A DNA stretch of 64,000 nt, taken from positions 5,796,600 through 5,860,599 of the forward strand of contig NC_134036.1 of assembly GCF_964204645.1 (NCBI RefSeq). Reading direction: 5' to 3'. A program made the translations under genes and the position numbers. The stretch is from Tubulanus polymorphus. Taxonomy: Eukaryota > Animalia > Nemertea. The notes under the pieces were generated by a model. That model was not told the origin of the DNA, did not search any database, and saw only the letters and a program-made list of their open reading frames with translations. Shown piece by piece: positions 3,049 to 34,617 of the stretch (position 1 is the stretch's first letter; each line of letters starts with the position of its first letter).

Positions 3049-6000
3049 TTAGTCGCATTGACAAGTGAACGACAGCGCCTCTGGCGGTCCTGCCAGCAAG
3101 CTCGTTCCTTTGAATTGAAGGAACATGACGTCACCCTCGGCTTCGACTCCCGGGATTGGTGGGGCCTGTTGGCCGCATTCCCACTGGCTCCAGTCGGCCG
3201 GGTCATTGGTTTCTTTCACTTTATGTCGGAAACCCTCTTCACAGTCTCCATTAGCGTCTTCAGCGTTAGCATTGATGGCTGTAAACTCGGCCTTTACCTT
3301 CTGCAAGAAAATAGAATCAGTGGACGGGCGATGAGTTAGAGATACTTAATGTCAGAGGTTCAGAGAACCCTATGTGTCTGTTCTGCTCGCTGTTCTCCCG
3401 CTACAGCTGTGAGGAGAGAGGGTTCACCGAGAACCTATTACGTCTGTTCTACTCGCTGCTCTCCCGCTACAGCTGTGAGGAGAGAGGGTTCACCGAGAAC
3501 CTATTGCGACTGTTCTACTCGCTGCTCTCCCGCTACAGCTGTAAGGAGAGAGGGTTCACCGAGGACCTATTGTGTTAATTCTTTCTGCTATTCAGTTACT
3601 CCTCGCATGAGATGACAAACTTCTTTTCTATGGATACATATGAATTCAAGACGGTATAAACCTTACCTGGTCTTCTTTGGGACAAACCAATGTGAATGTC
3701 GTGGTTTTACCCACGGCGGCGGTCCACAATAGAGGGTTGGCACCTGACATGGTTCCTTCTGGACATTCTAACACTAGTCCCGGTAGTGGGTGCGCTGCAT
3801 AAGATAGAATATACAGATATTTGTTCCGGTAATACCCACGCGGAATTATTTGGGGAATATAAAATCACCGCGTAAATTCGAACTGATCTGGGTATACTGT
3901 ATCCTTCAGACAGCCTTTATCGGCAAGGCGCTCAGCAATGCTACGATCGTCGATGCCTCAATGGGGGTCTGATTTTACTTTTTACTGTATTTCATGACCG
4001 TTACACACAATGTTTTTAAGTTGTGAAAAAAAAATGAATTGGTTACCGTTAATATCGACGAGGTATCTTGGTCGACTCTATTAGACGAAACGTGTTTATA
4101 TATTCTACTTACGGCAGTGCGCGTGCGGCGGTTCACATCCCGGGGTTTTCGGATACTTTTTGCAAACGTACGGCGACGGTTTGTACGGGCGTGGCGGGTA
4201 CGGTCCCGGCATCGGTCCCGGCATCGGTCCCGGTCCCGGAGGGTAGTTCGGTCCTGGTGGATAGTTCGGTTTCTATAATACAATCGAATCGTGAGTGAGC
4301 TCAATGTCTATGCGTGTATAAGATTTCGAGCTCGACCCGCACGATTGTGATTATACTAATTATTGTTATTTGTATTATTATGATCATTTTCAATAATTTT
4401 ATCCGGCGAGATAGTGAAATCCGACAGATTTTGGCGTAGTCACCTAACGACCTAATTGTACACTAGATGGCGAACTAATCGAAAGGTCGACACTCAAGCA
4501 GCACGTGCTTTTGGTCTGTCTAACAGTCGTTGAGATGCTCAAACACTGACAGATTGCGATACCTATAGAAATTTTTTTGGAAAAATTGCAAAAAATCCCC
4601 AGATCTAAATACCACGAAGGGGTTTTAACGTAACGTAAGAATTAGAATCGTGATTGAATCACGTAGTATACGAAATAAGCCTAATCAGCGCAAAACCAGT
4701 GATAAATGCGTGGTTTCCAAAAAAAGATGAATCGTCATCTTGTCAGCGAGTGATCTACCTCGATTAAGCGTCGATTAGTACGGACAGCATTACAGCAGTA
4801 AAGAAAAGTAGAGCAACGCCACGGCGCTTACGAATACCAGTCTGACTGTATCGCATTGCTCACAACCACGATACCATTATCTAGTAAGCGCTTATATCGT
4901 GTTACTGTCTTTGTTTGCTAAAAATGAGTATGAAATGCATTTTAGGTATTTTCTGGCGAAATCTATTGTTTGCGTAATATTTAAGAGGGTCTAATCATCA
5001 ATGAGTGAACAGATTGATAGGTGGTCGAGTTCTCCTTAAATCATCTTGGATCCGCCCCAGGTTGTGTGGATATACAGAGAGATTGTGGGGTGTGGTTTTC
5101 GAAGATGAATACGCCTTATTAATTTCTGGGGGTCGGTTCCTCAGTTGAGACTTTAAGTCCAAAAATGGTCTTAAATTTTAAGACTGGTCTTAAGTTGTTA
5201 GATTGTTTATAGAACTAACATGGTCTTAAATTGGTCTTAAGTCTAAGCCATGACTATTAAACCGGCCCCTGAGGGTTAAAGAATTGCCTTCTGGGCGCTA
5301 ATTCGATTATTACGGGGTTCCAAACCGAGGGGAATATAAGCGCAATCATTGCGTCGGTATAAAGCGAGAACAGTGTATGGAATGAGTGGTTGCGAGTGAT
5401 ACGATACAGTCAAACCCTGGAAATTCGTTCTTGAGAAAAAACAGTCATACTTACCGTGTGCCACGGGAAGTAGCCGTGGCCCGGTGCTGCATGACCCGCT
5501 GAAATAAAAAAAGAACAAAATCGTTATTACATTTTTATGATAAGGCTATTATCATTCAGTTTTCCGCGAGTTGGTACGTGTATTGTCGTGCAGTGGAAAT
5601 CCTATCTGCAGCCAGGACTGACTACCCACAATATGAAAAGTTTTCGCCGTAGCCTGTGTTCAGTTCTTTGTCCGTGATATTTTCAGTCGACATTGTCAAC
5701 TTCAAACCCCACAAATGAGTCATCTACTCAGTTGCCAAGAATCAAAACTACAGGTGAGGTCGTCATTGAAGTCCTGGGTACAGATGTTGAAACCTGCATA
5801 TGTAGATGTATACAGCCAATCGGCCATATATGCAACAAATTATAACCTCGTCTAAAGTGACTGCAGTGGCTTGATACCGTTCGTAAATTGCTTCGCGCGT
5901 CGTGTCGATTTCTATCGCGTCGGTAAAGCGCGTTTTGCATCGATTTAAGCGCGATGTAGAATGCATTTTATTTACTAACAAAAAAAAACTTACGATTCGC

Positions 6001-6844
6001 CGGTGCCGGTGCAGGTGCCGCTCCGTACGACGGATTGTACGGTGCTCCGAACTGTTGGTGCATCGGACCCATCATTCCCCACGCTGGAAAAATCGAAAGG
6101 AAATCTTTCAATACAAAATCGTCGAAATAAAACAGGCTAAGCCGACGGGAAGTAGCGCGATAGCAATTGAATGAGATGTCGATCGAATTTTCCTCGGCTT
6201 TAAACGAATTCATGATAAGTAAATGGATTTGGATTGTGATAAATTGTTAACCGAATGAAAGCACTCCGCGCGCTAAATTCAAGATATACTAATAAATATC
6301 TCCGTTTCTCAAATTTTGGCATCGATATCTATTCGTCAATCTTGCAGCTTGAACATTACGGACTTAACGAGTCGGCTTGAATTTCATAGAAGTATCGTAG
6401 TCGAGTGCTTTTTCAATTTGTCGAAGCGTTTATAGTACAGCACTTCAGTTCTATAAGCCTAATTTCGTTTCAATCTTTTATCAATTATATCGACTGGAAT
6501 CTTTGACAAACTACCCCTCAGCGCTTCGTTCGAGAATACGAATTACTGTTCGAAAATGTTCCGAGGGATTCGTTCTTGGTGTATACTTACGACTTCCACC
6601 CATGAAATCTGAAGAAAAAAACAAATAAGGAAATTATTTCTATTTCTCTAGTAAAGGCTGCGTCCTTTCCGCGGTATTTGAAGTATTGTGCGAATTACGC
6701 TCAAATCTAAATACAACAGCATCGGCTTTTTCCGATAATGATATGCAAATTGTATGCAAATTCTTCACGCTTTAGAAAAGAAAAACAGTACTCACACGCT
6801 TGAGCGCTTGCCAGTGCTAGGATTACAGCTATGACGACCTTCAT
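3049..6844 (-). CDS. Secreted Pro/Gly/Tyr-rich protein with C-terminal divergent CUB-like domain, paralogue 1 (7 coding exons, 246 aa)
   Basis: Hand-spliced, all introns GT-AG and phase-consistent: 6844-6796 (MKVVIAVILALASAQA, signal peptide), 6608-6591 (YFMGGS), 6083-5994 (PWGMMGPMHQQF...PAN), 5498-5455 (PGHAAPGHGYFPWHT), 4272-4113 (KPNYPPGP...YVCKKYPKTPGCEPPHAHC), 3794-3667, 3300-3049 (KVKAEF...ECGQQAP...SFTCQCD*). Total 741 nt. AATAAA at 2787-2792 (minus). Putative 5'UTR exon ends at 7305. The CUB assignment is by eye. Confidence 0.85.
3355..3575 (+). repeat. 66-bp minisatellite, about 3 copies, in the last intron of paralogue 1
   Basis: Unit ttctactcgctgctctcccgctacagctgtgaggagagagggttcaccgagaacctattgcg...; same family as 13605-14205 and 20475-20800. 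Confidence 0.9.
5129..5268. mobile_element. Short MITE, PIF/Harbinger-like
   Basis: TIR ggg(g/t)cggtt...aaccggccc flanked by CTG. The related copy at about 17164-17292 is flanked by CAG; CWG target duplications are known for animal Harbingers. Confidence 0.55.
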
Positions 6845-7004
6845 CTGTGGTCATCGTGGCGATTTAGAAGGAGATTAGAGAAAAAAGAGACATGACAACA
6901 TGTTTCAATTACGAGCAATTATTTCCAGATGAAGGAGGTGAATGAATTGCTCCTAATCATCAGTAGAAGCTATGCAAGTGTGATACCATTTACACTCTAA
7001 TGCT

Positions 7005-7127
7005 ACTATTAGCTATTATCACTATAACTATTACTTCTACTATCATTATTTTGATTATCATTATTACCATTATCATTATTATTTTTATGCATTATTATTA
7101 TTATTAATATTATTATTATCATTATAA

Positions 7128-7183
<56 letters not shown>

Positions 7184-7238
7184 GTTATTATTATTATTAT
7201 TATTATTATCATTATTATTATTATTATCATTATTATTG

Positions 7239-7269
<31 letters not shown>

Positions 7270-7298
7270 CATTATTATTATTATAATCATTGATTATC
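7005..7298. repeat. (ATT)n microsatellite
   Basis: Long ATT/ATC triplet run. Similar runs at about 10900-11030 and 14660-14725. Confidence 0.95.
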
Positions 7299-7377
7299 AC
7301 TCACCTCGAGATGATTTTCTTGCCCGAATCTAGATCAAACGGTTCTATCTCTCCGGTTCGGCGAGATATTAATCCTT

Positions 7378-7414
7378 AGTGACGGTGCCAGGTCTGGCGC
7401 GATGGGGTTTTATC
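7378..7414 (-). promoter_or_regulatory. Putative core promoter of paralogue 1 (GATAAAA plus TCACT initiator)
   Basis: GATAAAA at 7414-7408 and Inr-like TCACT with the A at 7380, spaced as in paralogues 2 and 3; downstream donor ctcgag|gtgag at 7305. Confidence 0.45.
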
Positions 7415-7759
7415 CTGTGCGGATCTGTTCGCCAGGTGGCACATATTTTCATCGCTGACACGTCCGAAGCGAAATGAATCGTCGGTTTATCGGCGATTAA
7501 AACCGTCTCGGCCACCCGCTACCCATCGTGCTCACGCACACAAGCTCCGATGACTTATGACCCAGGCGCTCTGGTTACGAACAGAACTAGAAAAGATGAT
7601 CTAACGATTTGTTTTTCTATTGTAAAGGACATAAAAATCGGCCGCAGCACCAGCTGTGGCTGTTGTTAAAATCGCTGCAAAGTTTCATTTCAATGAAATA
7701 TGCACATAAATCTGTGGTTGAATTACGTTCATGAAACTCGAAATAGTTCAATACGTAAA

Positions 7760-8570
7760 GTCAGTTACTGAGGGACTGTGTAATGTAAACCAGTGTTTAA
7801 ATACCACGGCACAGGGGTCAGTTACTGAAAGGTTGTTTAATGTAAACCAGTGTTGAAATACCGCGGTGCAGGGGTCAGTTACTATGAGGTTGTTTAATGT
7901 AAACCTGTGTTCAAATACCGCGGTACAGGGGTCAGTTATTGAAAGGTTGTTTAATGTAAACCAGTGTTTAGATACCGCGTTACAGGGGTCAGTTACTGAA
8001 AGGTTGTTTGATAAAAACCAGTGTTTAAATACCGCGGTACATGGGTCAGTTACTGAAAGGTTGCTTAATGTGAACCAGTGTTTAAATACCACGGTACCGG
8101 GGTCAGTTACTGAAAGGTTGTTTAATGTAAACCAGTGTTTAAATACCGCGGTACAAGGGTCAGTTACAGAAAGGTTGTTTAATGTAAACCAGTGTTTAAA
8201 TACCGCGGTACAGGGGTCAGTTACAGAAAGGTTGTTTAATGTAAACCAGTGTTTAAATACCGCGGTACAGGGGTCAGTTACTGAAAGATTGTTTAATGTA
8301 AACCAGTGTTTAAATACCGCGGTACAGGGGTCAGTTACAGAAAGGTTGTTTAATGTAAACCAGTGTTTAAATACCGCGGTACAGAGGTCAGTTACTGAAA
8401 GATTGTTTAATGTAAACCAGTGTTTAAATACCACGGTACAGGGGTCAGTTACTGAAAGATTGTTTAATGTAAACCAGTGTTTGATACCGCGGTACAGGGG
8501 TCAGTTACTGAAAGATTGTTTAATGTAAACCAGTGTTTAAATACTGCGGTATAGGGGTCAGTTACTGAAA
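7760..8570. repeat. 57-bp minisatellite, about 14 copies
   Basis: Unit ggggtcagttactgaaaggttgtttaatgtaaaccagtgtttaaataccgcggtaca; produces 19-aa periodic ORFs on both strands. Confidence 0.95.
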
Positions 8571-9399
8571 AATTTCTTCATACTTTTCAACGGCCGAACG
8601 TCGGCCACGTAAATAAAATGAATCATTTCAAAACGATAGTAAAGCACCTACAGCTATTCATGTACCGGTTAAAGCGTTTCGGTAATCGCAAAACCGTCCA
8701 TTACGTGCGCGGTTATGTGGTCTTACGTCGGCACATTGCAACACGCCAGGTGTCCGTAATGGCCGATGATAAAGTATATCTATTCAAATACGGTTGACGT
8801 CCGGCCCCTCACGCGCAGCCGGTCACGCTGCCTGTATAAATCACGAAAAGGCAAGCATATCCGGGAAACGGCACCGTTGCAGTCCTACGTCGTGTTATAT
8901 AGCGGCGTGGTTGCGTAGGCGTTTGGCGATGGCTTCCATCTCGGCCAGTCGTGTAACATTCGACGAGTAGCTCAGCGGTACACTGTTGCATCGTGGCTGA
9001 GTGACAAGCAGGTTTCTAGCGGTACCTCGAAAACCGTGCTCCCGTCGTTTATAGTTTCGATGACCGATCCGAATAGATTAGATAGCGTTGATTTTTAACT
9101 AAGATACCAAGATCCGAACGGCGTAAACCGCTAGCCCACCAAAAGAGTAGGAAAAGGGTAACGATTTTCGGCTTCGATTAGGGTTCAGGTTGTGGGCTGT
9201 AGGTAAAACCTATTGGCTCTAGGTATCTGAGTCCAGCAGCACAGGGTTCGTCCATAAGGGCAAAATAACGTTTACACGAATAACGTCTGCCACATATCCA
9301 ATTCCTTTTAAATGACTCAGTTTTTGTCATGTTACGCTACCACTGGAAATGTTCGGATGAATTTCGATCGAATTGTCGAATTAATCCGGGGGCGTCGTC

Positions 9400-9608
9400 G
9401 TTTGTTTGTTGGTTTGTTTGTTTTTTTGTTGGCTTTACGTCACTTGGTTGGTTTCCCGAGACTAACCCGATTGGATTGTTTATTTAACGACGGGACGGCC
9501 TTACACGCGTTGCCCGTACACTGTAAGCAGTCAGCAGGACTCGAACCCACTTGTCATTCAGCACTGCTAGTGGATGTTGCAGCATCACGCCTTATCCACT
9601 GAGCTAAC
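9400..9608 (-). mobile_element. tRNA-derived SINE
   Basis: Minus-strand head tagctcagtgg (A box) ... ggttcgagtcc (B box), body shared with 38550-38810, (AAAC)n-like tail. Confidence 0.65.
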
Positions 9609-10255
9609 GAGGCCGCTGTAAAGCACACTAGCGACACCTGGCGGATCATGTTCGCTTGCCGTAAGCGGAACCCTCGATTGCCACAGTCGAACGTGACGAG
9701 TCGACGAAACAGCGTTTAAAAAACCTGACGTTTCTTGCGTTATCAAAGTTTTGGTAGACGAATATTCGAAAAAACTGATCGATAATTCGTCTTTGAAAAT
9801 AGTGCATACACAATCGAGTAAAATCGAAAGTTCACTCGGAACTCTATGTAGAAATGTATATAGGAAGTATAGGGCCATCGATACTGGAATCGTAGGTTCC
9901 TGAAATATTTAGATCGCGTTTCGAGTACTCACTTGTGTCTCAGCGACGCGCTCTCCGAAGCTCAGGTCCTGGAACACGACCTACGCACAATCATCTCGAG
10001 ATGATTGCCCGCAGACACGACGCACGGGGACGAAAACCAAAATCATATACAAACAAACGAATATCGTCTACGGCGAATAAACGACCTTTATTTCACAAAT
10101 GATTATGCGCTTTTCTTTTCCAAGCGATACGACTTTTTAAACTATCTAATTATATTCAAATATGTAAATAGCAAACGGGGTTTTCGCGGGTCGGGCGGGC
10201 GTTCGATGTGCGTCGGAATGGTCGCCCGACCGCTTATGGCTCCGCTGTTCGGCAT

Positions 10256-13200
10256 CTAGACGCATTCGACTTTGTATTTAAGAGCTTCGGGCGGTCCGCT
10301 CGGCGCGGTGGTACCGGTGACTCGAACCTGCAACAGTTCGCCCTCGGACGTGAACGTGTCCTTGTCTCCCGGTGTGCCACACACCAAAGCGCTGTAGTCG
10401 GCGTCCTCGTTGTTGCCCTTGATGTTGATTTGGAAGCCGTCAGCGCACGAGCTGTCCGTGTTGAAGAAATAATCGTCGATCGTGATTTTCACTTTCTGCA
10501 ATATCGAATAACGAAACGAGCGATGCATTGGGATAAAGCGCATAGGGAGGTCGGTTATACGGAAATAGTGTCTATCCGGCCTTCGTCGAAATAGAAATGG
10601 GATCAGGTTATCATTTTTGTATCAGTTCTGTCCCGCGATGCCGTCAGGTTCGAATCCCTCGCGGCGCCATCGGGTTCAAGCCCCGGTCGCGGCGGTGTTT
10701 CTGTTCGACGACGCGGTCAACCTACCTTACCAGCCTCGCACGAGTAATAAGTGGTGGTGTCGACTTTGTTTTCGATGTCGCCGTAGATGACGGCTACGTC
10801 GGTGGCCGCTGTGGTCGCGTATTTGATGGTACCTTCAGGTAATCTTGCTGAATGCGAAATAGAAGAAAATAAGTCTACATTTGTTCTATATCAATGGTTA
10901 TGATAATAATAATAATTTATAACAATAATAACAATAATAATATAATAACAATTATTATTATTATTATTATTCTTATCATAATAACAATAATAATAATAAT
11001 AACAACGATATTGATAATTATCACGATAATGCGATTTTAATAGCGCTCAATCCAGCCAGAATGCTCAGAGCGCTTTACATGTCAATAAATAACACCTCAA
11101 AAAGATAGCATTTCACCCGCTTCAGTGCGTCTACACTGCAGTGGGGTATATAAATCGGTGAAGGACCGCGCTAGTGCGCCGCATTGCAGTGTATCCATGT
11201 TATTCGTGATAAGTTTTTAAGTCTATTTAAAACATGGCAGCTTCTGCCGGTCGTAGTGAAATACTAGCAACTAACGATACACCGCACCGCGGCGTAGACG
11301 CACTACAGCAGTATTCCCGTTACACAACTAAATGGGGAAAAATCTTTTTAACCCTCTAGTGCTTCAGCCCTTATGTATAATATTTCCTATGTTTTCTGCA
11401 TACTCTCGCCGCATAAATACAACAGAATTCAGTAGCAGTTTCGAAAAATTTGAGAAAAAAATTTTCTTCATATTTCAATGAACGTAATGTGGACATCAGG
11501 CTATAGAGCCTGGTTCTAAAGTTTCAATTCATGACCACAATACCTGGACGCCATCTATCATGAAAACTATGTACTAAGTGTCAACTTCTGTGGGCATCAG
11601 GCTTTCCGGGCAATTTTTTAGATTCCTTATATAACTTGCAAGTCAGCTATGATTGGATTAAGTTTGTCCGCGTGCGTTTCCAGCACTTTTGGGTATCGGT
11701 TAGTCAGCACTGATGGAACTGATTGCTAACGAAGGCTGACAAAGCTTGTCCGACAATTTTTGGGCACTATTGGAAAATTCGCGGCCACTATGAGTAATAT
11801 TATAAAGGAGCAACTAATGAAACTTGATGAGCTGTTTGAAGTGCGTGAGGTGGACAGTTGAGTGTTGACGAGTTCGATAAATATGCGAAGGTGATTAATT
11901 GTTAAATGATAGACATTAATAGACTATAGACGAATGTATGAATACGCCCACGCTTGGAGTGGGAGCTTTCACCAGGTTCATCAGGTGAATGAGTGATGAA
12001 AATAATATAAATGCGGGTACTTGAAGTAAGCTAGTTTATCCACGAAGCACAATCCGCCTAGTTTTGATAGTAATATTCCGCTTAGACTGTTACCGGTATC
12101 AACTTAACCGCAGTAAGAGACAGTGCCTACTGTATTTCACAAACTCTTACTCAGTATTTGATACCAACTCGGGGTAGAATTTTACCGGTATCAACTTTAC
12201 CGCAGTGAGAGACAGAGTCTACCGTATTTCACAAACTCTCACTCAGTATTTGACACCAACTCGGGGTAGAATTTTACCGGTATCAACTTTACCGCAGTAA
12301 GAGACAGAGCCTACTGTATTTCACAAACTCTTACTCAGTATTTGACAGCAACTCGGGGTATAATTTTACCGGTATCAACTTTACCGCAGTTTAAGACAGA
12401 GTCTACTGTATTTCACAAACTCTTACTCAGTATTTGACACCAACTTTTGGGTAGAATTTTACCGATCTGACTTTTGACCGCAGCAAAAGATGCAGACAAG
12501 GTCTATTTCCATTGCTCGGATTGCTCGCCATACTTACGGCATTTCTTCTCCGGTTCCGGTTTCGGGCAGTTCGGATGGTTAGGGTACCGTTGACAGACCC
12601 ACGGAGCGACCGGGTACGTACTCGGCGGATATGGGTGAGGTTGGTAGGGTTGCTGCTGCTGCGGGTACTGGTAGAACTGCGATGGCGGCTGCGGCTGCGG
12701 CTGCGGCTGTTGTCCGTAGGGTGGCCACATTTGTTGATACGGCATTTGAGACTGAAAATACACACAGAATCGATACGCTATTCGTCTATACTTGTTCGAA
12801 GACGCTAAATCCAATATAGCACTATTATGAGGGGATTACGAACGAAATTATATTTTTCACAACTTTTTCGAAAACCGGGCTTTTGCTCGGTGAAGGGGAC
12901 ATTTTTGGACTCGATTTTATTACTTAGTACTTACTCCCGGGTATGCTGGATGCGTGTGAGCTGGATCTGTTGACTGTATAATGAGAAAAGTATTTGATAG
13001 CCATCACAATGTTTGGTTATATTAACGACCCAACTTAGGTGTTTCAGCAAAATTATGATTAGTTACTAATGACGGTTAGTTCATTCTCAATAACTTCAAC
13101 GATTTAGCATAATTATGATTAGTCATAATGACGACCTTTTTGATCTCAATAACTTCAATGTTTCAGTAAAATTATGATTAGTTACTAATGACGACCTTCA

Positions 13201-14658
13201 CATTCTCGATAATTTCGACGATTCAGTAAAATTATGATTCGTTAATAAATACGACCTTCTCATCTTCAATAACTTTAAACGATTCAATCAATTTATGATC
13301 GGTTACTTATGACGACCTACTCATTCCCTATGACTTAAAAGTTTGATCAGTTTTTCTATTACTCTAAAAAGAGTAAAGAAACTCAGTCCCTAGTAATCAG
13401 ACTGATTGCACTAAGCTCTGATTCACCTAGTAGTCGCTATGATGTATCGTACTTACATCATGTTGGTGCATGTATGGTTGTGTCATTGGCCATTGCCCCG
13501 GGTGTTGGTGTTGATTGGCGTGTGCGTGGTTCGGATCGGTGTTCTGTAATTTCGAATCAAAATTCAGCGTTAGACAATATTATTTTCTTGATATCGTCAC
13601 ATAGCTGCGAGTAGAACAGCCGCAATGGGTTCTCGGTGAACCCCCTCTCCTCACAGCTGTAGCGGGAGAGCTGCGAGTAGAACAGTCGCAATAGGTTCAC
13701 GGTGAACCCCCTCTCCTCACAGCTGTAGCGGGAGAGCAGCGAATGGAACAAACGCAATAGGTTCTCGGTGAACCCGCTCTCCTCACAGCTGTAGCGGGAG
13801 AGCTGCGAGTAGAACAGTCGCAATAGGTTCACGGTGAACCCCCTCTCCTCACAGCTGTAGCGGGAGAGCAGCGAATGGAACAAACGCAATAGGTTCTCGG
13901 TGAACCCGCTCTCCTCACAGCTGTAGCGGGAGAGCTGCGAGTAGAACAGTCGCAATAGGTTCACGGTGAACCCCCTCTCCTCACAGCTGTAGCGGGAGAG
14001 CTGCGAGTAGAACAGTCGCAATAGGTTCACGGTGAACCCCCTCTCCTCACAGCTGTAGCGGGAGAGCTGCGAGTAGAACAGACGCAATAGGTTCTCGGTG
14101 AACCCTCTCTCCTCACAGCTGTAGCAGGAAAGCAGCGAATGGAACAAACGCAATAGGTTCTCGGTGAACCCGCTATCCTCACAGCTGTAGTGGGAGATCA
14201 GCGAGTTAAACAGGCCATTTTGGGTTCTTGTTGAACCCTCGTTCGGCTAGTCAAGCATCTTCGTTGCCGATAATCTTTAAGCTGTAGGGTTAATGATAAA
14301 CCTATCGTTTGAGTTAGTCTTACCGCGTGGCTATGAACGTAACCGATGTACGGTGGCTGTCCCTGGTGCGAGTGCTGATTCGGGTCCGCTGAAATAGCAA
14401 ACAACATATTCCGATGAATTCATGTGTTACGAAACATCGTTTAGAAAGTAAGTGTACGGCTTAAGTTATTTAATTTCGACTTTCATTGTTTACGGTCAGT
14501 CTGTTTTACTACTTATAAGAGGATGTTTTGTATCGGTACGTACGCTGTTGGTATCCCCAATCTGAAAGAGATCGAATATCATCACCATTACTACTGTAAT
14601 TATCAATATTAATATGATTATTATTGCAGCTATTGTATTTCGATGATGCAGCAATGGG

Positions 14659-14708
<50 letters not shown>

Positions 14709-15437
14709 CATTATTATTATTATTATTTTGCTATGTTTCATGTAAAACTTTAGAATATATAAATTTAAATAGTTACATAATAGAAATGACGAACTACGTA
14801 ATCGATATGATTATATCGATATACGTTTTTACGATATAACAGTAGGTTAGATATATAGGAAGCAATATTTGTATCAGACGTTACCCTAACAAAACGATAA
14901 AGAAAAAACAAACCGGAAAGAGAATAGAAAAACTGAACAAAACTCTAAATAATAATGAATTAAACACATCTGAGATATAGATATTTTGATCAAGGCTATT
15001 GGCAAATAATTCTTTTAACTGTAATTTGACATAAGTTTGATTTTCAAGCTATATTTGAAGCCGTTAATAGAGGGTGCATTGTTTAGGATTAAATCTAAAC
15101 TGTTCCCAAATTTTTTGAACATCTGCTTTTATTGAAAAGCGTTTCAAGACTAGGGCAAGATAAGCGTTGCACTCTTGTAGCGATGGAGAGCTGGGGAAAA
15201 TAATTCATCTGATTTCCTTAGCGTCTTAAGTGTTTTAAGAAGCTTATCTTATCCTATCATATTTTTTCCTATAATGTTTTCATCGAGATTTTTGTTTTTT
15301 GAAAAACTTCACGGGAACGGACGGTCGACGGAAATGACGTCACGTATTTATGCAAATCGTGCGTCACGACGACGGGTATCATACTTACACGCTTGAGCGC
15401 CAACTACCGCTAAAAGTATCAAACACGCTGCCTTCAT
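10256..15437 (-). CDS. Secreted His/Gln/Pro/Tyr-rich protein with C-terminal divergent CUB-like domain, paralogue 2 (8 coding exons, 277 aa)
   Basis: Exons 15437-15389 (MKAACLILLAVVGAQA), 14561-14544 (YWGYQQ), 14388-14324, 13543-13457, 12973-12935, 12751-12538, 10847-10726, 10495-10256. Total 834 nt, open frame, GT-AG junctions, same structure as paralogue 3. AATAAA at 10087-10092 (minus). Confidence 0.88.
12090..12490 (-). repeat. 90-bp dispersed satellite array
   Basis: Unit ctgcggtaaagttgagactggtaaaattctaccccgagttggtgtcaaatactgagtaagagtttgtgaaatacagtagactctgtctctta. Other arrays at about 18780-18960, 27630-27785, 28240-28700, 30975-31260, 33200-33460, 35325-35730 and 56860-57125. Confidence 0.9.
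13020..13340 (+). repeat. Degenerate 60-bp tandem repeat
   Basis: Unit aattatgattagttactaatgacgaccttctcattctcgataacttcaacgattcagtaa. Also at 19560-19965 (interrupted by a TIR element at about 19770-19881) and inverted at 36540-36780. Confidence 0.8.
13605..14205 (-). repeat. 66-bp minisatellite, about 9 copies
   Basis: Direct tandem repeats; explains the spurious 198-aa ORF with 22-aa periodicity. Confidence 0.92.
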
Positions 15438-16440: not shown

Positions 16441-16770
16441 TGTGACCGAGTCGTCTCGACGCGTCGGGTTTTTATGCGCGCCCGTTCGATTTGTCACACC
16501 ACGCCCCGCGGCGGCGCGTGGTTTTTGCCGAGACACCCACCTGCGACGAGCGGCTGGCGCCCGAACATTCCATCCATCCTTGCCACACCGTAGAACACAC
16601 CTCGCCGTGAGTAAGACGCGGCGGCGACAGGTGTGCGCTCGGTGATCTACACCGAATCGCGGCCGTAATGGATTTCTCGTAGCTGGTGCGCATTGTTTTC
16701 GGCGTTATGGGTCAATTGCGCGCTGCGCAACGTGCGAAGACGCAACGCCGGCGATTTATGCGTTCTTTCT
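16441..16770 (-). promoter_or_regulatory. Conserved promoter-proximal block of paralogue 2
   Basis: About 330 bp highly similar to 24053-24378; CATAAAAA at 16476-16469, Inr-like TCACA at 16443, 5'UTR exon donor at 16358. Confidence 0.6.
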
Positions 16771-18040
16771 TTTCGCGTGAAGCCGGCCTCCCAGCTGCGG
16801 CGGCCTCCAGCGGCGAAAAGTGTCGGACTGTGAGTCCACGGTTTTCGACCTAAAAACTAAAAACTAAAAGCCGGCGGTCGTCGTCGGGCGCATTTTCGGA
16901 GCTCCGTCGTCTGAGAAACGAAATCGATTTAATCAAATCCTTTTACTTGTTTGATGTTAAATACTGCGATTAACATCAGTGGTCCATTCGCAGTTTTTTG
17001 TTTCGATTTTTTATTTTCGATATTTACAGACTTAAAACATTAGAATAATGAACTGATTCGTATTCTTAAGTCAATCTCAAGAGGAACTGGGTCCAAAACG
17101 ATTACCCCGAGTCCCAGTTCTGGTGATCATAATTCACAGCTTCTTCGGGACCGCGTGTAGCCAGGGGCCGGTTGCAGAGTCATGGCTTAGCCTTAAGACC
17201 AGTCTAAGACCAATTTAGTTCTATAGCCAATCTAACAACTTTAAGATTTAGGACCATTTTTGGATATAAAGCATGACTGGGCAACGGGCCCCAGGAAAGT
17301 AAGCAAGATTCGAAGCCATCCGTGGTTTGATATTGTCACTCCCCGTTTGACGACATCATCGAATGGGTTTTAATTAATTAGATGAATTCAATTTAATTCC
17401 CAACACTCGGACAACCTTCAATTTCGAAACTATCCCCTTCGGGCCGTTATTTGGGCCAGGATTTTCGAACTAACCGATGCCATAGGACAGAAAAACGTTA
17501 CAAATTTCGCCAATGGCGCCCGGGTAACGTGCAGCTGCAACAACGCTACTGCGGCAAGCGAGGATTCCGCGTATGGCAAGCAGAGATCCACCAGGTGTCG
17601 CTAGTAGTTACTTGGTCTTCCGCGTGAATTCATACAACATTTCAACTTGAAATCGGATGAACTTTTCTGTGAAACTGATAATATCTAATGATATCGAATG
17701 AAAACTTTCGGAAAATTAAAGCGTACTAAGTTGGCCGTACGATAATGCACGGACTAAAGAGCCTAACTAATTCAACGGAGGACCTACTATACTCGTCGCG
17801 CCATCTGGTGGCGTAGCTTGTGTAAGCAGCTCCCCGATTAACGATCCCGACATTGTACAACGTAACAAACCAGGCTAGAGTAATCTATACGCTAAACAAA
17901 TGACCTTTATTTTTCTTTTTTTTCAAAACGAAAAAGCTTCTCTTCGATAAGTTATATGCGGATGTTTTCGCGGTTCGGGCGGGCGTTCGATGTGCGACGG
18001 AATGATCGCCCGATCGCTAGTAGCCTCCGGTGTTCGGCGT

Positions 18041-21000
18041 TTAGACGCATTCGACGTTGTATTTGAGAGCCTCAGGCGGTCCGCTGGGCGCGGTGGTACC
18101 GGTGACTTTCACCTGCAACAGTTCGCCCTCGGACGTGAACGTGTCCATGGCTCCCGGTGCGCCGCACACCAAAGCGGTGTAGTCGGCGTCCTCGTTGTTG
18201 CCCTTGATGTTGATTTGGAAGCCGTCAGCGCACGGGCTGGCCGTGTTGAACGCGTACGTGACGATTGAGACTTTCACTTTCTGCAATGTCGAAAATAAGA
18301 AACGACGTTAGATAAATATAGCATCGCGATTTTCTAATAAATAGTAACGGTTTATTCATCGTTTCGAATCGCTTTTCATAATCAAATCGAGTAAACGATT
18401 TCGTTGGGTTTCGCTACGTCGTCGGATTCGAATTGCGGCTGGTTGGGGTCTGGCGTGGCAAGCAGGTTCGAATCCAGACTTTGTGTGAAACCTGGCAGAG
18501 CCTCGCGGCGTCATCGGGTTCGAATCCCGGTCACGGCGGTATTTCTGTTCGACGACGCGGGCAACCTACCTTATCATCGGCGCACGAGTAATAAGTGGTG
18601 GTGTCGACTTTGTTTTCGATGTCGCCGTAGATGACGGAAATTTCAGTGGCCGGCGTGGTCGCGTATTTGACTGTGCCTTCGGGTAATCTTGCTGAATTTG
18701 GAAAAAGAACGAGTAAACGGTGTGAATTATCATAGATGAGACACGGTAAAGCGTAGGATTAGTTTGGCCATGGTTCTTTACCGAGTGAAGAGACAGTGGT
18801 CTATTGTAAGCAGTGAAAGACGGAGTCTAATGTATTTCACAAACTCTTACTCAGTATTTGACACCAACTCGTGGTAGAATTTTACCGGTCTCAACTTTAC
18901 CGCAGTAAGAGACAGAGTCTACTGTATTTCACAAACTCTTACTCGGTCTTTGGCACCAGTCCAAATTTTATAGAGTGTTCTGCATTTCATAAACTATTGA
19001 TCAATATTTGGTTCGAAAGACTATATACTGTAAATGCTCGTCGTACTTACTGCATTTCGGTGCTGCCACTGGTTTCGGGCAGCCCGGGTGGTTAGGGTAT
19101 CGTTGGCAAACCCACGGGGCGACCGGGAACGGGTGCTGCGGTTGCGGTTGCGGCTGCGGCTGCGGGTACTGGTAGTAAGGCGGGAACTGCGGCTGTGGCT
19201 GCGGTTGCGGTTGCGGTTGCGGTTGAGGCTGCGGTTGCTGTTGTCCGTATGGTGGCCACATCGGTTGATATGGCATTTGACCCTGGAAATAGAGAATCGA
19301 AACTCGATCAATGGATGCTTTATAGGCACGCGGCTAATTGAATATTTCTCTAAGCAAAAAAATAAGGAATTAGTAGTAAGCGGGATGTTATTCACGAATT
19401 GGGGATAGTGCCCAGTGTACCGGGATAACAGTGACATTGCTCGAAGTCGAATTTGTTATGTATGTGGTGGTGAACTTACTCCAGGGTACGCTGGATGCGT
19501 GTGAGCTGGATCTGTCGACTGTATAATGAGAAAAGTATTTGATAGGCATCACGATGTTTGGTTATAGTAACAACCCAACTTCGGTGTTTCAGCAAAATTA
19601 TGATTAGTTACTTATGACGATTAGTTCATTCTCAATGACTTCAACGATTCAGCATAATTATGATTAGTCATTATGACGACCATCTCAATCTCAATAACTT
19701 CAACGATTCAGTAAAATTGTGATTAGTTACTAATGACGACCTTCTCATTCTCGATAACTTTATCGATTCCGGATCCAGTTTCACAGTCAGGAGTTAAGAT
19801 TTGACCCCCTGAGTTAACTCATTGAAAATGAACTAACTTTAACTCAGAGTTCACTCTAACTCACAACTGTGGAACTGGATACAGGACAATGCTTAATCGT
19901 TGTCACTTATAAACGACCTTCTCATTCTCAATTACAAGATTCAGTTAGATTATGATTAGTTATTATGTTACTCTGATTCACCTAGTAGTCGCTATTATGT
20001 ATTTTACTTACATCATGTTGGTGCATGTATGGTTGTGTCATTGGCCATTGCCCCGGGTGTTGGTGTTGATTGGCGTGTGCGTGGTTTGGATCGGTGTGCT
20101 GTAATCAATCAAAACAGCAGAATTAGTTGATATGTATTATATCTATCGGTATTTTTGACGCTATTGAAACCAATTCACTAACGATGTTAGATATTGAAAT
20201 TGACTTTAAACGACTGTTTGTGCACTACGTCATCAATATTGGCGTTCCAAAACATAGCTTCTGGTTGAGTTTATTGGCGTTTAATTTGAAATTGATTATA
20301 TGTCATGACTTCTATTTTTATTTTCGGTGAAATTCCATGTATTTCAAATAATGAATTCTAATGGCAGGGATGATATAGTGTAGGTGGGTGCGGACTACGT
20401 CATCGAAATTAGGGCTAGACGGTTTGCAGGTCAATACAATTCAATTGTCATTTATTGGAACAGGCACAATGGGATCTCGGTGATACCCTCTCCTCATAGC
20501 TGTAGCGGGAGAGCAGCGAATAGAACAGACGCAATAAGTTTTCAGTGAACCCCCCTCCTCACAGCTGTATAGCAGGAGAGCAAAGAAGTAGATCAGACGC
20601 AATAGGTTCTCGGTGAACCCGCTCTCCTCACAGCTGTAGCAGGAGAGCAGCGAGTAGAACAGACGCAATAGGTTCTCAGTGAACCCCCTCTCCCCACAGC
20701 TGTATAGTGGCAGAGCGGCGAGTAGATCAGACGCAATAGGTTCTCGGTGAACCCACTCTCCTCACAGCTGTAGCCGGAGAGCAGCGAGTAGAACAGAGGA
20801 TATTACCCACTGTAGCTTTCCGATGGCAATTCTTTCACCAAGGGTGAGATCAAAGCTGTATCTTGTAAATAAATCTTACCTGGTGGTTATGAACATAACC
20901 GATGTACGGAGGCTGCCCCTGGTGAGAGTGCTGATTTGGATTCTCTGAAAAAAAACAATCAAGGTTTGATCAGCATACGATAGTTTAGGCTATAAGGATT

Positions 21001-22536
21001 TGGAATTCGGGAAAACAAAACGTGCACGCAATTAAAATTAGTCGATTCAAAAGTATAGAAAAATAATGGTTATAATCACACTCACGTTGTTGGTATCCTC
21101 CCCAATCTGAAAGTAAAACATACGAAAATTAACAACGTTTTCTAGTTAGGTTCGACACGGCAGAGTGTGGCTAGCGCGTTTCCGCTAGATGGCGTGAGTG
21201 AATGTCAGTTGATTTTTAGATATTGTTTAAACGTATTTTATAGCCTCTCTCTGTATATACCATGCTTACGGTTGGGGTTTGAATGTTGATTCCTAAATTT
21301 TTCGCGCTTGTACTATTCGTTCATTTTCAAACAACGAGGACTCCGTGTCGCCAGCTTTCCCGGTAGATGGCGTGCGTATCAGTGCGACGACCCGGTCGAT
21401 ATTTAGTTCATTTTGATTTTTAGCCTCCCTCATCAGAAATTAGGCAAATAACTCCTCTGGAGTAACTCGGATGATCTTTTGGTTCGTATATAGGGTGAAT
21501 TTTACTAATCACCATTCAAAGAATTTGAGAAATGATGGATAGATTTCGATCGAATCTGAGAAGAAATCCGGGAGTTGTCGTCTGAATGCACTCTAGCGAC
21601 ACCAGGTGGATCCTCACTTGCCACACGTAAAGTCCTCATTCTGAACCGCTGTTACGAATGCAAACATAACAGTACAAATGCGCGAAAGGACACTGTTGGC
21701 CGTCGACATTTTTGTGAAATTTAATGCTAAGAATAGATAGTAAGGACATTTTCTTTAATCATCGCTTATGTTGATCGGTATAGAGTTCCGTCCTCTGGCG
21801 GAAAACCCTTAACGAATCGATAACCCGATAGATGGCGCACGGGTTGTGTATTTTGATATTTTTAACGCTTGTCACCGTTTACAGATTGCCGCTTCGATAT
21901 AAACACCGATATCAGCCGATTCGCGACCCTAAGTTGCGAAAAGTTGCGGTCGAGCAGATAGTTTGCGAAAGGATGAATTTGCAAAAATAGTTTTTTTGAA
22001 ACCATAAAAACCGTTACAATTATGTTAACATACATTGATAACTACTATGCGTTATTTTTTCGGGGTTCTGTGCGAGTCGATGTGCACTACGTCAAAAAAT
22101 ATTGCTGTTTCAAAACAACCATTGTGATTGTGAATTTGGCCTTCATTTTGTAATCAAACATCTAATCCACGGATCTAATTTCAAATTTGATGAGCTATAT
22201 TGATTTTTCGATAGGATGTGCACTACGTCATCAATATATCGGGGATAGACTGGTTGCCGGTCAATTCAATTCAATCATTGGAATATTCAAATCCAAATTA
22301 ACTGTATGCAATGGAGTGTTTTCCGTTCCGTGTCGCACGTGGTCTCGTGGTTTTTTTTTGCCGTCAATGTTTGGAGACATGCCGTATATACATAACAGCA
22401 AAACAAAATCGTATCATATTCAAATTGCGTGTCATGGCGTCACGTTTTTATGCAAATTAGGCACCATGACGTCATGCGCATACTTACACGCTTGAGCGCC
22501 TACAACGGCTAAAAGTATCAGACACGCTGCCTTCAT
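18041..22536 (-). CDS. Secreted His/Gln/Pro/Tyr-rich protein with C-terminal divergent CUB-like domain, paralogue 3 (8 coding exons, 284 aa)
   Basis: Exons 22536-22488, 21106-21086 (YWGGYQQ), 20944-20880, 20098-20012, 19518-19480, 19282-19051, 18691-18570, 18280-18041. Total 855 nt, open frame, exon phases identical to paralogue 2. AATAAA at 17906-17911 (minus). Confidence 0.88.
20475..20800 (-). repeat. 66-bp minisatellite, about 5 degenerate copies
   Basis: Same unit, same intron and same orientation as the array in paralogue 2. Confidence 0.88.
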
Positions 22537-22579
22537 CTGCAAAATAGAAATCAGAATATTTCAGTTGTCATTGACTCGT

Positions 22580-22916
22580 AATTCCTCCGCAAGGTTCGAA
22601 CCCGATGGCATCGAGAATTGCCACGGTACGAAACCCTGCCACATTAGACCGAGTGCGCAGCTACACGCGCCGCTTAGATGATGTCATTAATAGCCTATCA
22701 GATATCCTGTTTTATTTTAGCCCGGGTTTTCCCATTAATGATTCTTCCGCGAAATTTGCGTCAGCGATTTTAAAACGAGCAATCTGATTAGTGCCGCAAG
22801 TTTCCGCGCGGTTAATCTTCGCATGTACCTGCGCGCTCGGTCTAGTGCGGCAGGGGTTCGTACCGTGGCTGAGTTTAGCCATGCCATCAGATTCGGATCC
22901 CTGCCGAGGAAGGATG
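22580..22916. mobile_element. MITE, same family as 26108-26445
   Basis: Long imperfect TIRs (ggttcgaacccgatggcatc...gccatcagattcggatccctgccgaggaaggatg) in the 5'UTR intron of paralogue 3. Partial copy at about 52610-52860. Confidence 0.7.
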
Positions 22917-24052
22917 CCGTTGATTCGGTTGTTTTCACTATCGTTATCGGGCCCGAAGATCTAAAAATCACTTGCGCGCATCGTCTTTTTTGTCTTTATA
23001 AATTTATAACATCATTCAGTTTTTTTTGGATAAAATATTACAATTAAAAAAATCGAAATATTAAAAAGCGATTTTCTGTTTATGTCCTCGAAATAGAATT
23101 GCCGCTCAAAAAGCTCGGAATGCGCCTGGCCTGAGTGTACGGCCTGTTCTACCACATATTATTTATGAAATTATTTTCATCTTTTTAACTTATTACACCG
23201 AATCAATAAATATCTCGAGATGATTTATTTTTCGAACGTAAATACTTTGATTTCGGCCGATCTATATTTTCGCATACGAATAAGAGACGTACTGCGAGTA
23301 TAGATTCGAGATAAGATTCAGCTAGAATTTAAAAAATGAGTTTGTCAAAATTGCAAAATTGAAACGCATTTTGTATTCATTACTAAATTTCCTAATTTTT
23401 CGTTTTTTTTCTTGAATATATTTTTCAACCGTTATTTCGTTAGTGATGAAAACCTAAACGAATTCAACGTCCATTTCAAAAAGTTCGCGGTGCATAAGTT
23501 CGCCTGTCGGATCAAACCATCTGAAACGAACTCATTTCGACCTAAACTAAACCTAGAAAACGAATCCTGAGATATTCATATGTAACATTAACTGAAAAAA
23601 ATAAGTATTTTCTATGAAAAAATTGACAAGAAAATCTAAATAAAAGAAAGATGAAGAAAAAGAAAAATATTTTTAAAAACCAGGACATTCATGACCGCCA
23701 GAGACTGATTACAATCTCGATATTTCAGAGTCGATAAGCAAAATCGACAGTTCGTGATATAACAGTATATTAGAACAGTTCTTCGGTATTAACTTAACTC
23801 CATCATCAGGGAAACGAAGAAAAAAAAAAATGGTTTCCCCGAGTTAGAAATAAAATCATGAATTATTTACAAATGAAAGCCTCAGCTGCATAACTATAAT
23901 TTTTTTTTTCCTAGAAAAAAAAAAATATTTATATAAAGACCGTATATCTTTCTTTCTTCCATTTTTTCGAACGAATCATTTTTACGTACCATTTTTGCGA
24001 ATATTAAATCGATCGACGATCGTATTTGTTTTCGGAACGAATTAATCCTCAC

Positions 24053-24378
24053 AGTGATCGAGTCGTCCGGACGCGTCGACTTTTTATACGCGCCCGTTCC
24101 GATTTGTCACACCACGCCCCGCCCGGTGCGATCGGTTGCGGGACTCCTACGCGCCAGCGGCTGGCGCCCGAACGTTCCATCCATCCTTGCCACACCGTAG
24201 AACACACCTCGCCGTGATTAAGACGCAGCGGCGACAGGTGTGCGCGCGGTGATCTACACCGAATCGCGGCCGTAATGGATTTCTCGTAGCTGGTGCGCAT
24301 TGTTACCGGTGACACGGGTTAACTGCGCGCTGCGCTTCGTGCGAAGACGCAGCGCCGGCGATTTATGCGTTTTTCTCG
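24053..24378 (-). promoter_or_regulatory. Conserved promoter-proximal block of paralogue 3 with TATA box
   Basis: TATAAAAA at 24088-24081, TCACT Inr 33 nt downstream (24055), 5'UTR exon donor at 23990; near-identical to 16441-16770. Confidence 0.65.
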
Positions 24379-34080: not shown

Positions 34081-34548
34081 GACATGACTCTTGAAATGAA
34101 CCACGTTATGAAGCGCATTTATTCATACACTCAATTCATTCGACTTATTTCTTCAAATATCAGTGATCTGATAACATTGTTAATAGCTATAGACAGATAT
34201 ATCGTTGTTTGTTTGCCTTTAAAAACTGTTTGAATAATAAGTATGAAAAGAAGTTGTATCTACATCACGTTTGTACTGGTCATTTCAGTTTGTGATCAGA
34301 CTAGGAATTTTTTCAAATATAATACAAGTTGGTCTATTAATCCGTGCACTGGATACGAGAGATGGAATCAGAGGTTGACTCCATTTGCAAAAAACATTTA
34401 TTTGAAATATTATGAAGTTTTTGTTCGCGCTCCTATATTTGCTATACTACCGACGGTGATAGTGGTTCTAATAACTATTCGATTGATTTTCACGTTGAGA
34501 CGCGCAGGTGCAGCGAGAAAAACCATGTCTACAAATAATCAAACTCCT

Positions 34549-34617
<69 letters not shown>

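What the first reader, a model, noticed from the sequence alone, without database searches (positions are those of the whole stretch)
3049..24090. Hidden three-gene family of secreted low-complexity proteins with a divergent CUB-like domain, built from micro-exons
Seen: three tandem minus-strand genes splice by hand into open 246, 277 and 284-aa products. Each has a 49-nt signal-peptide exon whose ATG directly follows the acceptor AG, 18-90-nt exons encoding aromatic/Pro/Gln/His/Gly-rich segments, a Cys linker, and a two-exon beta-rich domain ending GPPEALxF/YxxxC. The ORF track shows only fragments. Known: the pattern KVKxxF/I ... C.DGF.I ... CG..P....SEG..L.V follows CUB domain strand order, although the usual YP, CxW and SD/GF motifs are absent. 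Inference: a lineage-specific extracellular material (tube, mucus, adhesive, egg case or cuticle) in which a disordered N-terminus drives assembly and the folded C-terminus mediates oligomerisation. I do not recognise this architecture as a named family.
Basis: partly seen in the sequence, partly recalled or inferred. Interest (0 to 1): 0.88.

Follow-up and report, generated by a model that had tools for sequence, protein, structure and literature searches.

The report
Ribbon-worm secreted low-complexity CUB proteins
Three neighbouring ribbon-worm genes, part of a species-restricted family of eight, encode secreted proteins with a sticky disordered tail joined to a very divergent CUB binding domain; they are real and poorly annotated, and probably form some extracellular material, though which one is untested.

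Summary
On the minus strand I rebuilt three GT-AG gene models. The third gives 237 aa, not 246. Each has a 49-nt signal-peptide exon with its ATG directly after an acceptor AG, an 18-21-nt micro-exon, short Pro/Gln/His/Tyr/Gly-rich exons, a Cys-loop linker exon and a two-exon C-terminal domain.

The comparative evidence is strong: paralogues keep the same exons, all exon length differences are multiples of three, exons are 74-98% identical against 48-78% for introns, and dN/dS is 0.25-0.46.

The organism is Tubulanus polymorphus. The family is larger than stated: eight intact genes plus one fragment, all on one contig. RefSeq has unnamed models for four of them; its model of gene 2 is truncated.

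The C-terminal domain has a CUB fold in two subfamilies (VIA Z 8.2-10.9; Foldseek lists almost all CUB; phmmer 1.2e-10 to a 3xCUB protein). Pfam's CUB model does not match it.

The function is inferred: a secreted self-assembling or cross-linked matrix, adhesive or tube protein. I found no relatives outside this species. It is a new variant of a known kind, of moderate interest.

The parts
3049..6844 (-). Gene 1 (subfamily B), coding exons 6844-6796, 6608-6591, 6083-5994, 5498-5455, 4272-4113, 3767-3667, 3300-3049; 237 aa
   Evidence: Open spliced frame and GT-AG sites. All seven exons are conserved in paralogues B2 and B3.
10256..15437 (-). Gene 2 (subfamily A), coding exons 15437-15389, 14561-14544, 14388-14324, 13543-13457, 12973-12935, 12751-12538, 10847-10726, 10495-10256; 277 aa
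   Evidence: The junction of the last two exons is identical in RefSeq model LOC141914224 (P0001).
18041..22536 (-). Gene 3 (subfamily A), coding exons 22536-22488, 21106-21086, 20944-20880, 20098-20012, 19518-19480, 19282-19051, 18691-18570, 18280-18041; 284 aa
   Evidence: It is a tandem duplicate of gene 2.
6796..6844 (-). 49-nt signal-peptide exon of gene 1 (16 codons ending AQA, plus 1 nt); ATG directly after CAG
15389..15437 (-). 49-nt signal-peptide exon of gene 2; ATG directly after TAG
22488..22536 (-). 49-nt signal-peptide exon of gene 3; ATG directly after CAG
6591..6608 (-). 18-nt phase 1-1 micro-exon of gene 1 (YFMGGS)
   Evidence: It is conserved with its splice sites in B2 (18 nt) and B3 (21 nt).
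14544..14561 (-). 18-nt phase 1-1 micro-exon of gene 2 (YWGYQQ)
21086..21106 (-). 21-nt phase 1-1 micro-exon of gene 3 (YWGGYQQ); skipping it gives an in-frame TAG
12935..14388 (-). Three His-rich module exons of gene 2 (65, 87 and 39 nt), each opening with a DPx(x)HxH-type motif
   Evidence: Six HxH motifs were counted.
12538..12751 (-). Gln/Pro/Tyr-rich plus Cys-loop linker exon of gene 2 (214 nt, ends in phase 1 just after a Cys codon)
   Evidence: The C-x8-C loop with YP is conserved in all subfamilies.
19051..19282 (-). Same linker exon in gene 3 (232 nt)
4113..4272 (-). Pro/Gly/Tyr-rich plus Cys-loop linker exon of gene 1 (160 nt)
10726..10847 (-). First CUB exon of gene 2 (122 nt, phase 1 in, phase 0 out)
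   Evidence: It is joined to the next exon in P0001.
10256..10495 (-). Second CUB exon of gene 2, with stop codon
18570..18691 (-). First CUB exon of gene 3
18041..18280 (-). Second CUB exon of gene 3, with stop codon
3667..3767 (-). First CUB exon of gene 1 (101 nt)
3049..3300 (-). Second CUB exon of gene 1, with stop codon
16358..16767 (-). Candidate promoter of gene 2: block 16767-16549 is 93% identical to the block upstream of gene 3, TATA-like CATAAAAAC at 16476-16468, and a possible non-coding first exon ending at a GTAGGT donor after 16358. Predicted only.
   Evidence: The block occurs only at these two genes in the genome.
23990..24374 (-). Candidate promoter of gene 3: conserved block 24374-24156, TATAAAAAG at 24088-24080, and a possible non-coding first exon ending at a GTACGT donor after 23990. 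Predicted only.

Best explanation
The three genes belong to a family of eight genes found only in Tubulanus polymorphus. All eight encode small secreted proteins with four parts. First, a cleavable signal peptide carried on its own exon. Second, a 100-150 aa disordered, almost uncharged tail: Pro/Gln/His/Tyr-rich in genes 2 and 3, Pro/Gly/Tyr-rich in gene 1. Third, a conserved small Cys loop. Fourth, one very divergent, acidic CUB domain. This much is shown by the sequence. Most likely (inferred) they are building blocks of an extracellular material such as tube lining, hardened mucus, adhesive, egg-case or secretory-granule matrix. In this reading the aromatic/Pro tail self-associates. In subfamily A the tail loses its charge as its 14-15 histidines deprotonate, going from +9/+11 at pH 5.5 to about -1/-3 at pH 8.1 (seawater-like). 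It could then condense, bind metal ions or be cross-linked through Tyr. The CUB domain (-6 to -9, genes 2 and 3) would dock onto another matrix component or onto the cationic tail. The odd cysteine count (7 or 9 in the mature protein) would allow covalent dimers.
For: Real coding genes: open GT-AG models; the same exon plan in five paralogues; exon length differences all multiples of 3; exons conserved over introns and dN/dS 0.25-0.46; the micro-exon is needed for an open frame in gene 3. RefSeq models of subfamily C join signal, low-complexity, linker and CUB exons at the same intron positions and phases. Secretion: MK + hydrophobic core + AQA in all five, read with the -3/-1 rule (established knowledge); there is no transmembrane stretch or other retention motif that I could see. 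CUB. Material-like tail: Pro 22-37%, Tyr 8-11% and His 10% in subfamily A, with very few charged residues; the pH charge switch and the acidic CUB; odd Cys counts. Tandem expansion with repeat-length changes in the tail is typical of structural secretory proteins (my knowledge).
Against: There are no expression, tissue or proteomic data, because the RNA tools could not be used. The only public model of gene 2 does not include the tail exons. No relative with a known role was found. A low-complexity tail is also compatible with a mere spacer. CUB domains are general binding modules and do not point to a material. No mucus or proboscis proteome paper that I opened mentions such proteins (another genus).
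Confidence: 0.5

Rival explanations
1. They are soluble recognition or binding proteins rather than a material: single-CUB secreted ligand binders used in immunity or in reproduction (sperm or egg coat). The low-complexity tail is then only a flexible spacer or multimerising tag.
For: Single-CUB secreted proteins such as the spermadhesins are among the best structural matches. The genes form a tandem, species-restricted, fairly fast-evolving family; dN/dS of the CUB exons is 0.33-0.46. Small single-CUB proteins of spiralians are the nearest Atlas feature hits, which is a lead only.
Against: The tail is under at least as strong constraint as the CUB in the gene 2/3 and gene 1/B2 pairs (dN/dS 0.17-0.23 against 0.44-0.46), which a spacer would not need. 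Its composition is sticker-rich, not Ser/Thr/Gly linker-like. No dN/dS above 1 was seen.
Confidence: 0.27
2. They are components of the toxic mucus or proboscis secretion, either as toxin carriers or as precursors of bioactive His/Pro-rich peptides.
For: Knottin-type secreted peptide genes were noted 22 kb upstream by another reader (untested). Nemertean mucus and proboscis secretions hold many unannotated secreted proteins.
Against: The tail has no dibasic processing sites and almost no Lys/Arg in subfamily A. There is no similarity to any toxin family. The conserved folded part is a CUB, not a toxin fold.
Confidence: 0.08
3. The tail exons and the CUB exons are not one gene. In that case the real product of gene 2 is the short RefSeq-type protein that starts inside my intron 6, and the upstream exons are separate or non-functional.
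For: RefSeq LOC141914224 (147 aa) starts in the intron upstream of the first CUB exon and lacks a signal peptide and tail.
Against: The first CUB exon starts in phase 1 and needs an upstream coding exon. The linker exon ends in phase 1 in all eight genes and supplies a Cys at the position of the first Cys of the canonical CUB pattern. RefSeq itself joins tail and CUB in three paralogues. The tail exons are under purifying selection. The N-terminus of the 147-aa model lies in sequence that is not conserved in gene 3 (intron 6 is 1690 nt against 359 nt).
Confidence: 0.05

Closest known systems
CUB domain (Pfam PF00431), e.g. MASP-1 CUB2, C1r/C1s, neuropilin a1, TSG-6, PCPE-1
   Same: Same beta-sandwich fold over about 110 residues, with the same strand order. 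The Cys pair flanking the central strands (C-x-[DE]-G ... C-G) is conserved. These are extracellular binding modules.
   Different: Pfam's model gives no hit even at E 10. The YP and CxW motifs are missing or displaced. The residues aligned to the Ca2+-binding Glu/Asp/Asp of Ca-binding CUBs are Asn, Gly (with Asp/Glu one position earlier) and Thr in the hhalign register. There are extra C-terminal Cys (ECV or CQC).
Spermadhesins (PDB 1spp, 1sfp): secreted proteins consisting of one CUB domain
   Same: Small secreted proteins with a single CUB, in a clustered gene family. They are among the top structural matches.
   Different: Spermadhesins have no low-complexity tail and no Cys-loop linker. 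They are mammalian seminal-plasma proteins. Sequence identity is 8-13% in the structural alignments.
Histidine- and aromatic-rich structural proteins of marine invertebrates (squid beak HBPs, Nereis jaw Nvjp-1, mussel foot proteins such as mfp-1 with its Tyr-Pro-Pro decapeptide) and vertebrate amelogenin (comparison from my knowledge)
   Same: Secreted, disordered and nearly uncharged tails rich in Pro, Tyr and His or Gln. Gene 1 type has YPPGP and KPSPY-like motifs reminiscent of mfp-1. Gene 2/3 type has a Pro/Gln/His/Met/Trp mix reminiscent of amelogenin. Both show the pH-switchable charge expected of His-rich coacervating proteins.
   Different: No sequence homology was shown or sought. None of those families carries a CUB domain. 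No DOPA, metal or phase-separation data exist for these proteins.
CUB-containing skeletal or shell matrix proteins of corals and molluscs (e.g. Acropora skeletal proteome, PMC3748352)
   Same: CUB domains occur in secreted extracellular matrices together with low-complexity proteins.
   Different: Those are larger multidomain proteins (CUB with peptidase or other modules) in mineralised tissue. Palaeonemerteans such as Tubulanus have no mineralised skeleton (my knowledge). No homology beyond the generic CUB fold.
C. elegans CUB-like (PF02408) secreted proteins
   Same: Tandemly expanded, small, secreted single-domain proteins restricted to a lineage.
   Different: PF02408 does not match. Those proteins have no low-complexity tail.

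Membership tests
CUB domain superfamily | Beta-sandwich fold of about 110 residues with CUB topology | tested here: met
   AF2 model of gene 2's domain (pLDDT 66): Foldseek top 50 are almost all CUB, best E 8e-5, TM 0.5-0.67. AF2 model of paralogue C3 (domain blocks pLDDT 62-87): VIA-align top 22 are all CUB, Z 8.2-10.9, rmsd about 3 A, 100-125 residues aligned (rmsd up to 5.2 A in two rows), and the next fold scores Z 6.8. Foldseek agrees. The models are of moderate confidence only.
CUB domain superfamily | Significant sequence similarity to bona fide CUB domains | tested here: met
   phmmer of gene 2's last exon against 1.84 billion representatives: a 3xCUB protein (Pfam CUB 2e-101) at E 1.2e-10, summed over 3 repeats. 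hhalign of the family against that protein's repeats: E 9.1e-5, probability 59%, in the canonical register. The PDB sequence profile gives only a weak neuropilin-2 CUB hit (E 1.3-1.6).
CUB domain (Pfam PF00431 as curated) | Score above Pfam's gathering threshold | tested here: not met
   No CUB, CUB_2 or related model at E up to 10 for the exons, for P0001 or for P0009-P0011.
CUB domain superfamily | Four conserved Cys forming two disulfides (C1-C2 and C3-C4) | tested here: inconclusive
   The C3 and C4 positions are invariant in all eight genes. A Cys at the end of the linker exon and one near the end of the first CUB exon could be C1-C2, but the second is displaced in subfamilies B and C. 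Disulfide geometry could not be read from the models.
Ca2+-binding CUB subset | Glu/Asp/Asp Ca2+ ligands | tested here: inconclusive
   In the hhalign register the three positions are Asn, Gly (with Asp/Glu one position earlier) and Thr. The alignment is too weak to exclude a shifted site.
Secreted protein (classical signal peptide) | N-terminal n-h-c region with small residues at -3 and -1 | tested here: met
   MK + 11-12 hydrophobic residues + AQA in five genes, encoded by a dedicated exon. No predictor was available; judged by the von Heijne rule.

The most novel reading that the evidence does not exclude
The family supplies the unknown structural matrix of a nemertean-specific secretion, either the parchment-like tube or the pseudocnidae/rhabdoid granules of the proboscis, whose structural compounds 'have not been characterized' (PMC7897414). 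It would work as a pH-switched histidine/aromatic coacervate anchored and dimerised through a degenerate CUB domain. That would be a new design for a marine biomaterial protein.
Probability: 0.15. Interest if true: 0.7.

Novelty: new variant of a known kind. Interest (0 to 1): 0.4.

Why it matters
If the inference is right, these genes would be the first molecular handle on a ribbon-worm secreted material. They would also add a natural design to the small set of histidine/aromatic self-assembling proteins studied as biomaterials: a pH-switchable disordered tail fused to a folded CUB anchor. On a smaller scale, the case shows that CUB domains can drift below Pfam's detection while keeping fold and intron positions. 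It also shows that micro-exon, low-complexity genes are under-annotated: gene 2 is truncated in RefSeq, and no protein model was found for genes 1 and 3 within the limits of the searches.

Tried and rejected
2. The look-up of encoding contigs for P0001 found nothing on record.
3. Pfam on all exon pieces and on the public models gave no family.
4. Profile searches against PDB sequences gave only E of about 1.
5. A first protein alignment misplaced the subfamily B first-CUB exons. It was rebuilt.
6. The last word-indexed search was saturated by low-complexity words and missed even known members. It therefore says nothing about longer RefSeq models for genes 1 and 3.
8. Rfam found no family in the window.
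9. Looked for a shared promoter between gene 1 and genes 2/3. None was found; only a minisatellite is shared with B2.
10. Rejected readings: a collagen-like tail (Gly is not at every third position), a neuropeptide or toxin precursor (no dibasic sites), and pseudogenes (open frames and purifying selection).
11. Joined spliced models were built only inside local scripts, to check frame, composition and dN/dS. They were not sent to any search, fold or database tool. Those searches used single exons by reference or public protein ids.


Full report
OBSERVATION. The ORF list shows only fragments on the minus strand: three C-terminal pieces ending in GPPEAL plus a Cys, three Pro/Gln/Tyr-rich pieces and a signal-like start. 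Reading the minus strand, I joined these with canonical splice sites. Every acceptor is CAG or TAG, most behind a pyrimidine tract (weak in gene 1's exons 1 and 6). Every donor is GTAAGT-like. In all three genes the ATG of a 49-nt exon directly follows an acceptor AG, and that exon ends one base after the AQA of a typical signal peptide.

A scan of the introns for phase-compatible exons found the 18-21-nt micro-exons: YWGYQQ in gene 2, YWGGYQQ in gene 3 and YFMGGS in gene 1. With its micro-exon, gene 1 gives 237 aa.

ARE THE EXONS REAL? The evidence is therefore comparative.

- Without its micro-exon, gene 3 reads T+AG = TAG.
- Two further paralogues upstream of the window (B2, B3) keep all seven exons of gene 1, including the micro-exon and its splice sites. 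They give open 254- and 245-aa products.
- Exon lengths differ among the five models only by multiples of three: 18/21, 18/18/21, 90/87/84, 160/214/187 and 214/232.
- Exons are 74-98% identical between duplicates, against 48-78% for introns.
- dN/dS is 0.25 (genes 2/3) to 0.46. It is below 1 for the low-complexity part as well (0.17-0.60), with Fisher p from 6.6e-12 to 8e-5 for the whole genes.
- AATAAA signals lie 130-257 nt after the stops.

ORGANISM, FAMILY SIZE AND PUBLIC ANNOTATION. The window is contig C12:5796600-5860599 of a 268-Mb assembly. The proteins that match carry NCBI names from Tubulanus polymorphus, as earlier notes of this scan said.

Six-frame searches of the whole genome with the last exon of each type find nine copies, all on C12:
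- seven in one minus-strand array from 5.772 to 5.815 Mb (last exons; the array reaches about 5.82 Mb), made of one truncated fragment, C1, B3, B2, gene 1, gene 2 and gene 3;
- two on the plus strand at 6.048 and 6.053 Mb (C2, C3).

Last-exon identities are 84% within subfamily A, 76-84% within B, 49-56% between B and C, and 30-32% between A and B.

RefSeq has 'uncharacterized protein' models for four members.
- P0001 (LOC141914224, 147 aa) is gene 2 truncated. It uses my last junction but starts in intron 6 and has no signal peptide.
- P0009, P0010 and P0011 are the C genes.
- P0009 (240 aa) has the whole plan: an ATG directly after AG, a signal exon ending in phase 1, a 29-nt micro-exon, a linker exon ending in phase 1 after a Cys, a first CUB exon of 41 whole codons plus a split codon, and a last exon opening with KVK.

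Intron positions and phases of the folded part are thus shared by all three subfamilies. No protein model for genes 1 or 3 turned up, but the length window of the word-indexed search and a saturated last search leave that open. No relative outside this species appeared.

THE C-TERMINAL DOMAIN. Pfam gives nothing at E up to 10. However, phmmer of gene 2's last exon against 1.84 billion representatives hits a 3xCUB protein at 1.2e-10. hhalign of the family against that protein's repeats gives E 9e-5 in the canonical register: the K-T-T-T strand on the CxW strand, KVK on the next strand, C-x-[DE]-G on C-x-Y-D, and CG on CG.

An AlphaFold model of P0001:28-147 (pLDDT 66) retrieves almost only CUB domains with Foldseek. 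A model of P0009:90-240 (domain blocks pLDDT 62-87) gives 22 CUB chains at Z 8.2-10.9 with VIA-align before the first other fold at Z 6.8. The Atlas look-up agrees, as a lead only.

The residues aligned to the Ca2+ ligands of Ca-binding CUBs are not acidic, but the alignment is too weak to be sure of this.

THE REST OF THE PROTEIN. The mature N-part is 104-148 aa.
- In genes 2 and 3 it is Pro 23-25%, Gln 18-22%, His 10% and Tyr 8-10%, with 6-7 HxH motifs and only 3-4 Lys+Arg.
- In gene 1 it is Pro 30%, Gly 14% and Tyr 10%, with YPPGP-type repeats.

Its computed charge falls from +9/+11 at pH 5.5 to -1/-3 at pH 8.1 in genes 2 and 3. The CUB domain is acidic (-6 to -9 in genes 2 and 3, -8 to -11.5 in gene 1). 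A C-x8-C loop with a YP inside is kept in all subfamilies. It sits in a low-confidence part of the model. Mature proteins have 7 or 9 Cys, so at least one cannot pair within the chain.

HOW IT PROBABLY WORKS. Shown: these are secreted, modular proteins under purifying selection, and the family grew by tandem duplication with repeat-length changes in the tail.

Inferred: the tail is a sticker-rich self-associating region, and in subfamily A it is a histidine pH or metal switch. The CUB is a docking module. The odd Cys gives covalent dimers. Together they would build or coat an extracellular material. That reading gets about 0.5.

The main rival is a soluble recognition protein of the spermadhesin kind (about 0.27). 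The tail is at least as constrained as the CUB in two of the four pairs compared, which argues against a mere spacer. The toxin-related reading and the two-genes reading are weaker. Details are in the Rival explanations section.

COMPARISON AND NOVELTY. The fold is known. The combination of signal peptide, low-complexity tail, Cys loop and a single degenerate CUB matched no named family in any search, and I found no paper on it. I class it as a new variant of a known kind. Interest is moderate, because lineage-specific secreted low-complexity proteins are common in marine invertebrates and nothing yet ties these to a material.

CANDIDATE PROMOTERS. A 219-nt block that is 93% identical and found only upstream of genes 2 and 3 is followed by a TATA-like box, about 110 (gene 2) or 90 (gene 3) nt of sequence and a good donor. 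This fits a non-coding first exon spliced to the ATG exon. It is a prediction only.

LIMITS. There is no RNA evidence. The structure models are of moderate confidence. Joined spliced models were used only in local scripts and were not searched or folded. All external searches used single exons by reference or public protein ids.

Noticed in passing
window 3357-3582 (intron 6 of gene 1), 13471-14344 (intron 3 of gene 2), 20453-20838 (intron 3 of gene 3): The same 66-nt minisatellite sits in introns of all three genes. It lies in a different intron in gene 1, and apparently in the opposite orientation, since the same long repeat ORF reads on the + strand in gene 1 and on the - strand in gene 2.
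   Followed up: partly
window 7646-8572: A 57-nt tandem repeat (12 or more copies, 83-91% alike) lies between gene 1 and gene 2. The same array lies upstream of paralogue B2.
   Followed up: partly
window 6737-6783: A short block in intron 1 of gene 1 is conserved at 82-87% in B2 and B3 and holds two ATTTGCAT octamer-like motifs. It could be an intronic regulatory element.
   Followed up: no
window 11100-11216 (minus strand): The RefSeq model LOC141914224 starts here, inside my intron 6 of gene 2, with 27 residues that lack a signal peptide. It is probably an ab initio 5' extension, or else an alternative start.
   Followed up: partly
all family members, e.g. window 15437, 22536, 6844; C12:6050117: In every member examined, including a RefSeq model, the start ATG directly follows an acceptor AG. 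The whole 5' UTR must therefore lie on an upstream exon or come from a spliced leader.
   Followed up: partly
window 29181-30329, 31727-32884, 34243-34878 (+) and 48853-50014 (-): Intron-poor rhodopsin-type/Srw-like GPCR genes, three in tandem and nearly identical (the third is truncated as an ORF), plus a fourth on the other strand split between two frames (Pfam 7TM_GPCR_Srw 4e-12 to 1e-11).
   Followed up: partly
window 41008-43044 (+): A 678-aa ORF with C2H2-like motifs at both ends and a Ser-rich internal repeat (ADSVI/VxRTVS...). It has no Pfam match.
   Followed up: partly
C12:5772098-5772232 (about 24 kb before the window): A truncated copy of the last CUB exon (44 of about 90 residues, then out of frame). 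It is probably a dead family member at the end of the array.
   Followed up: partly
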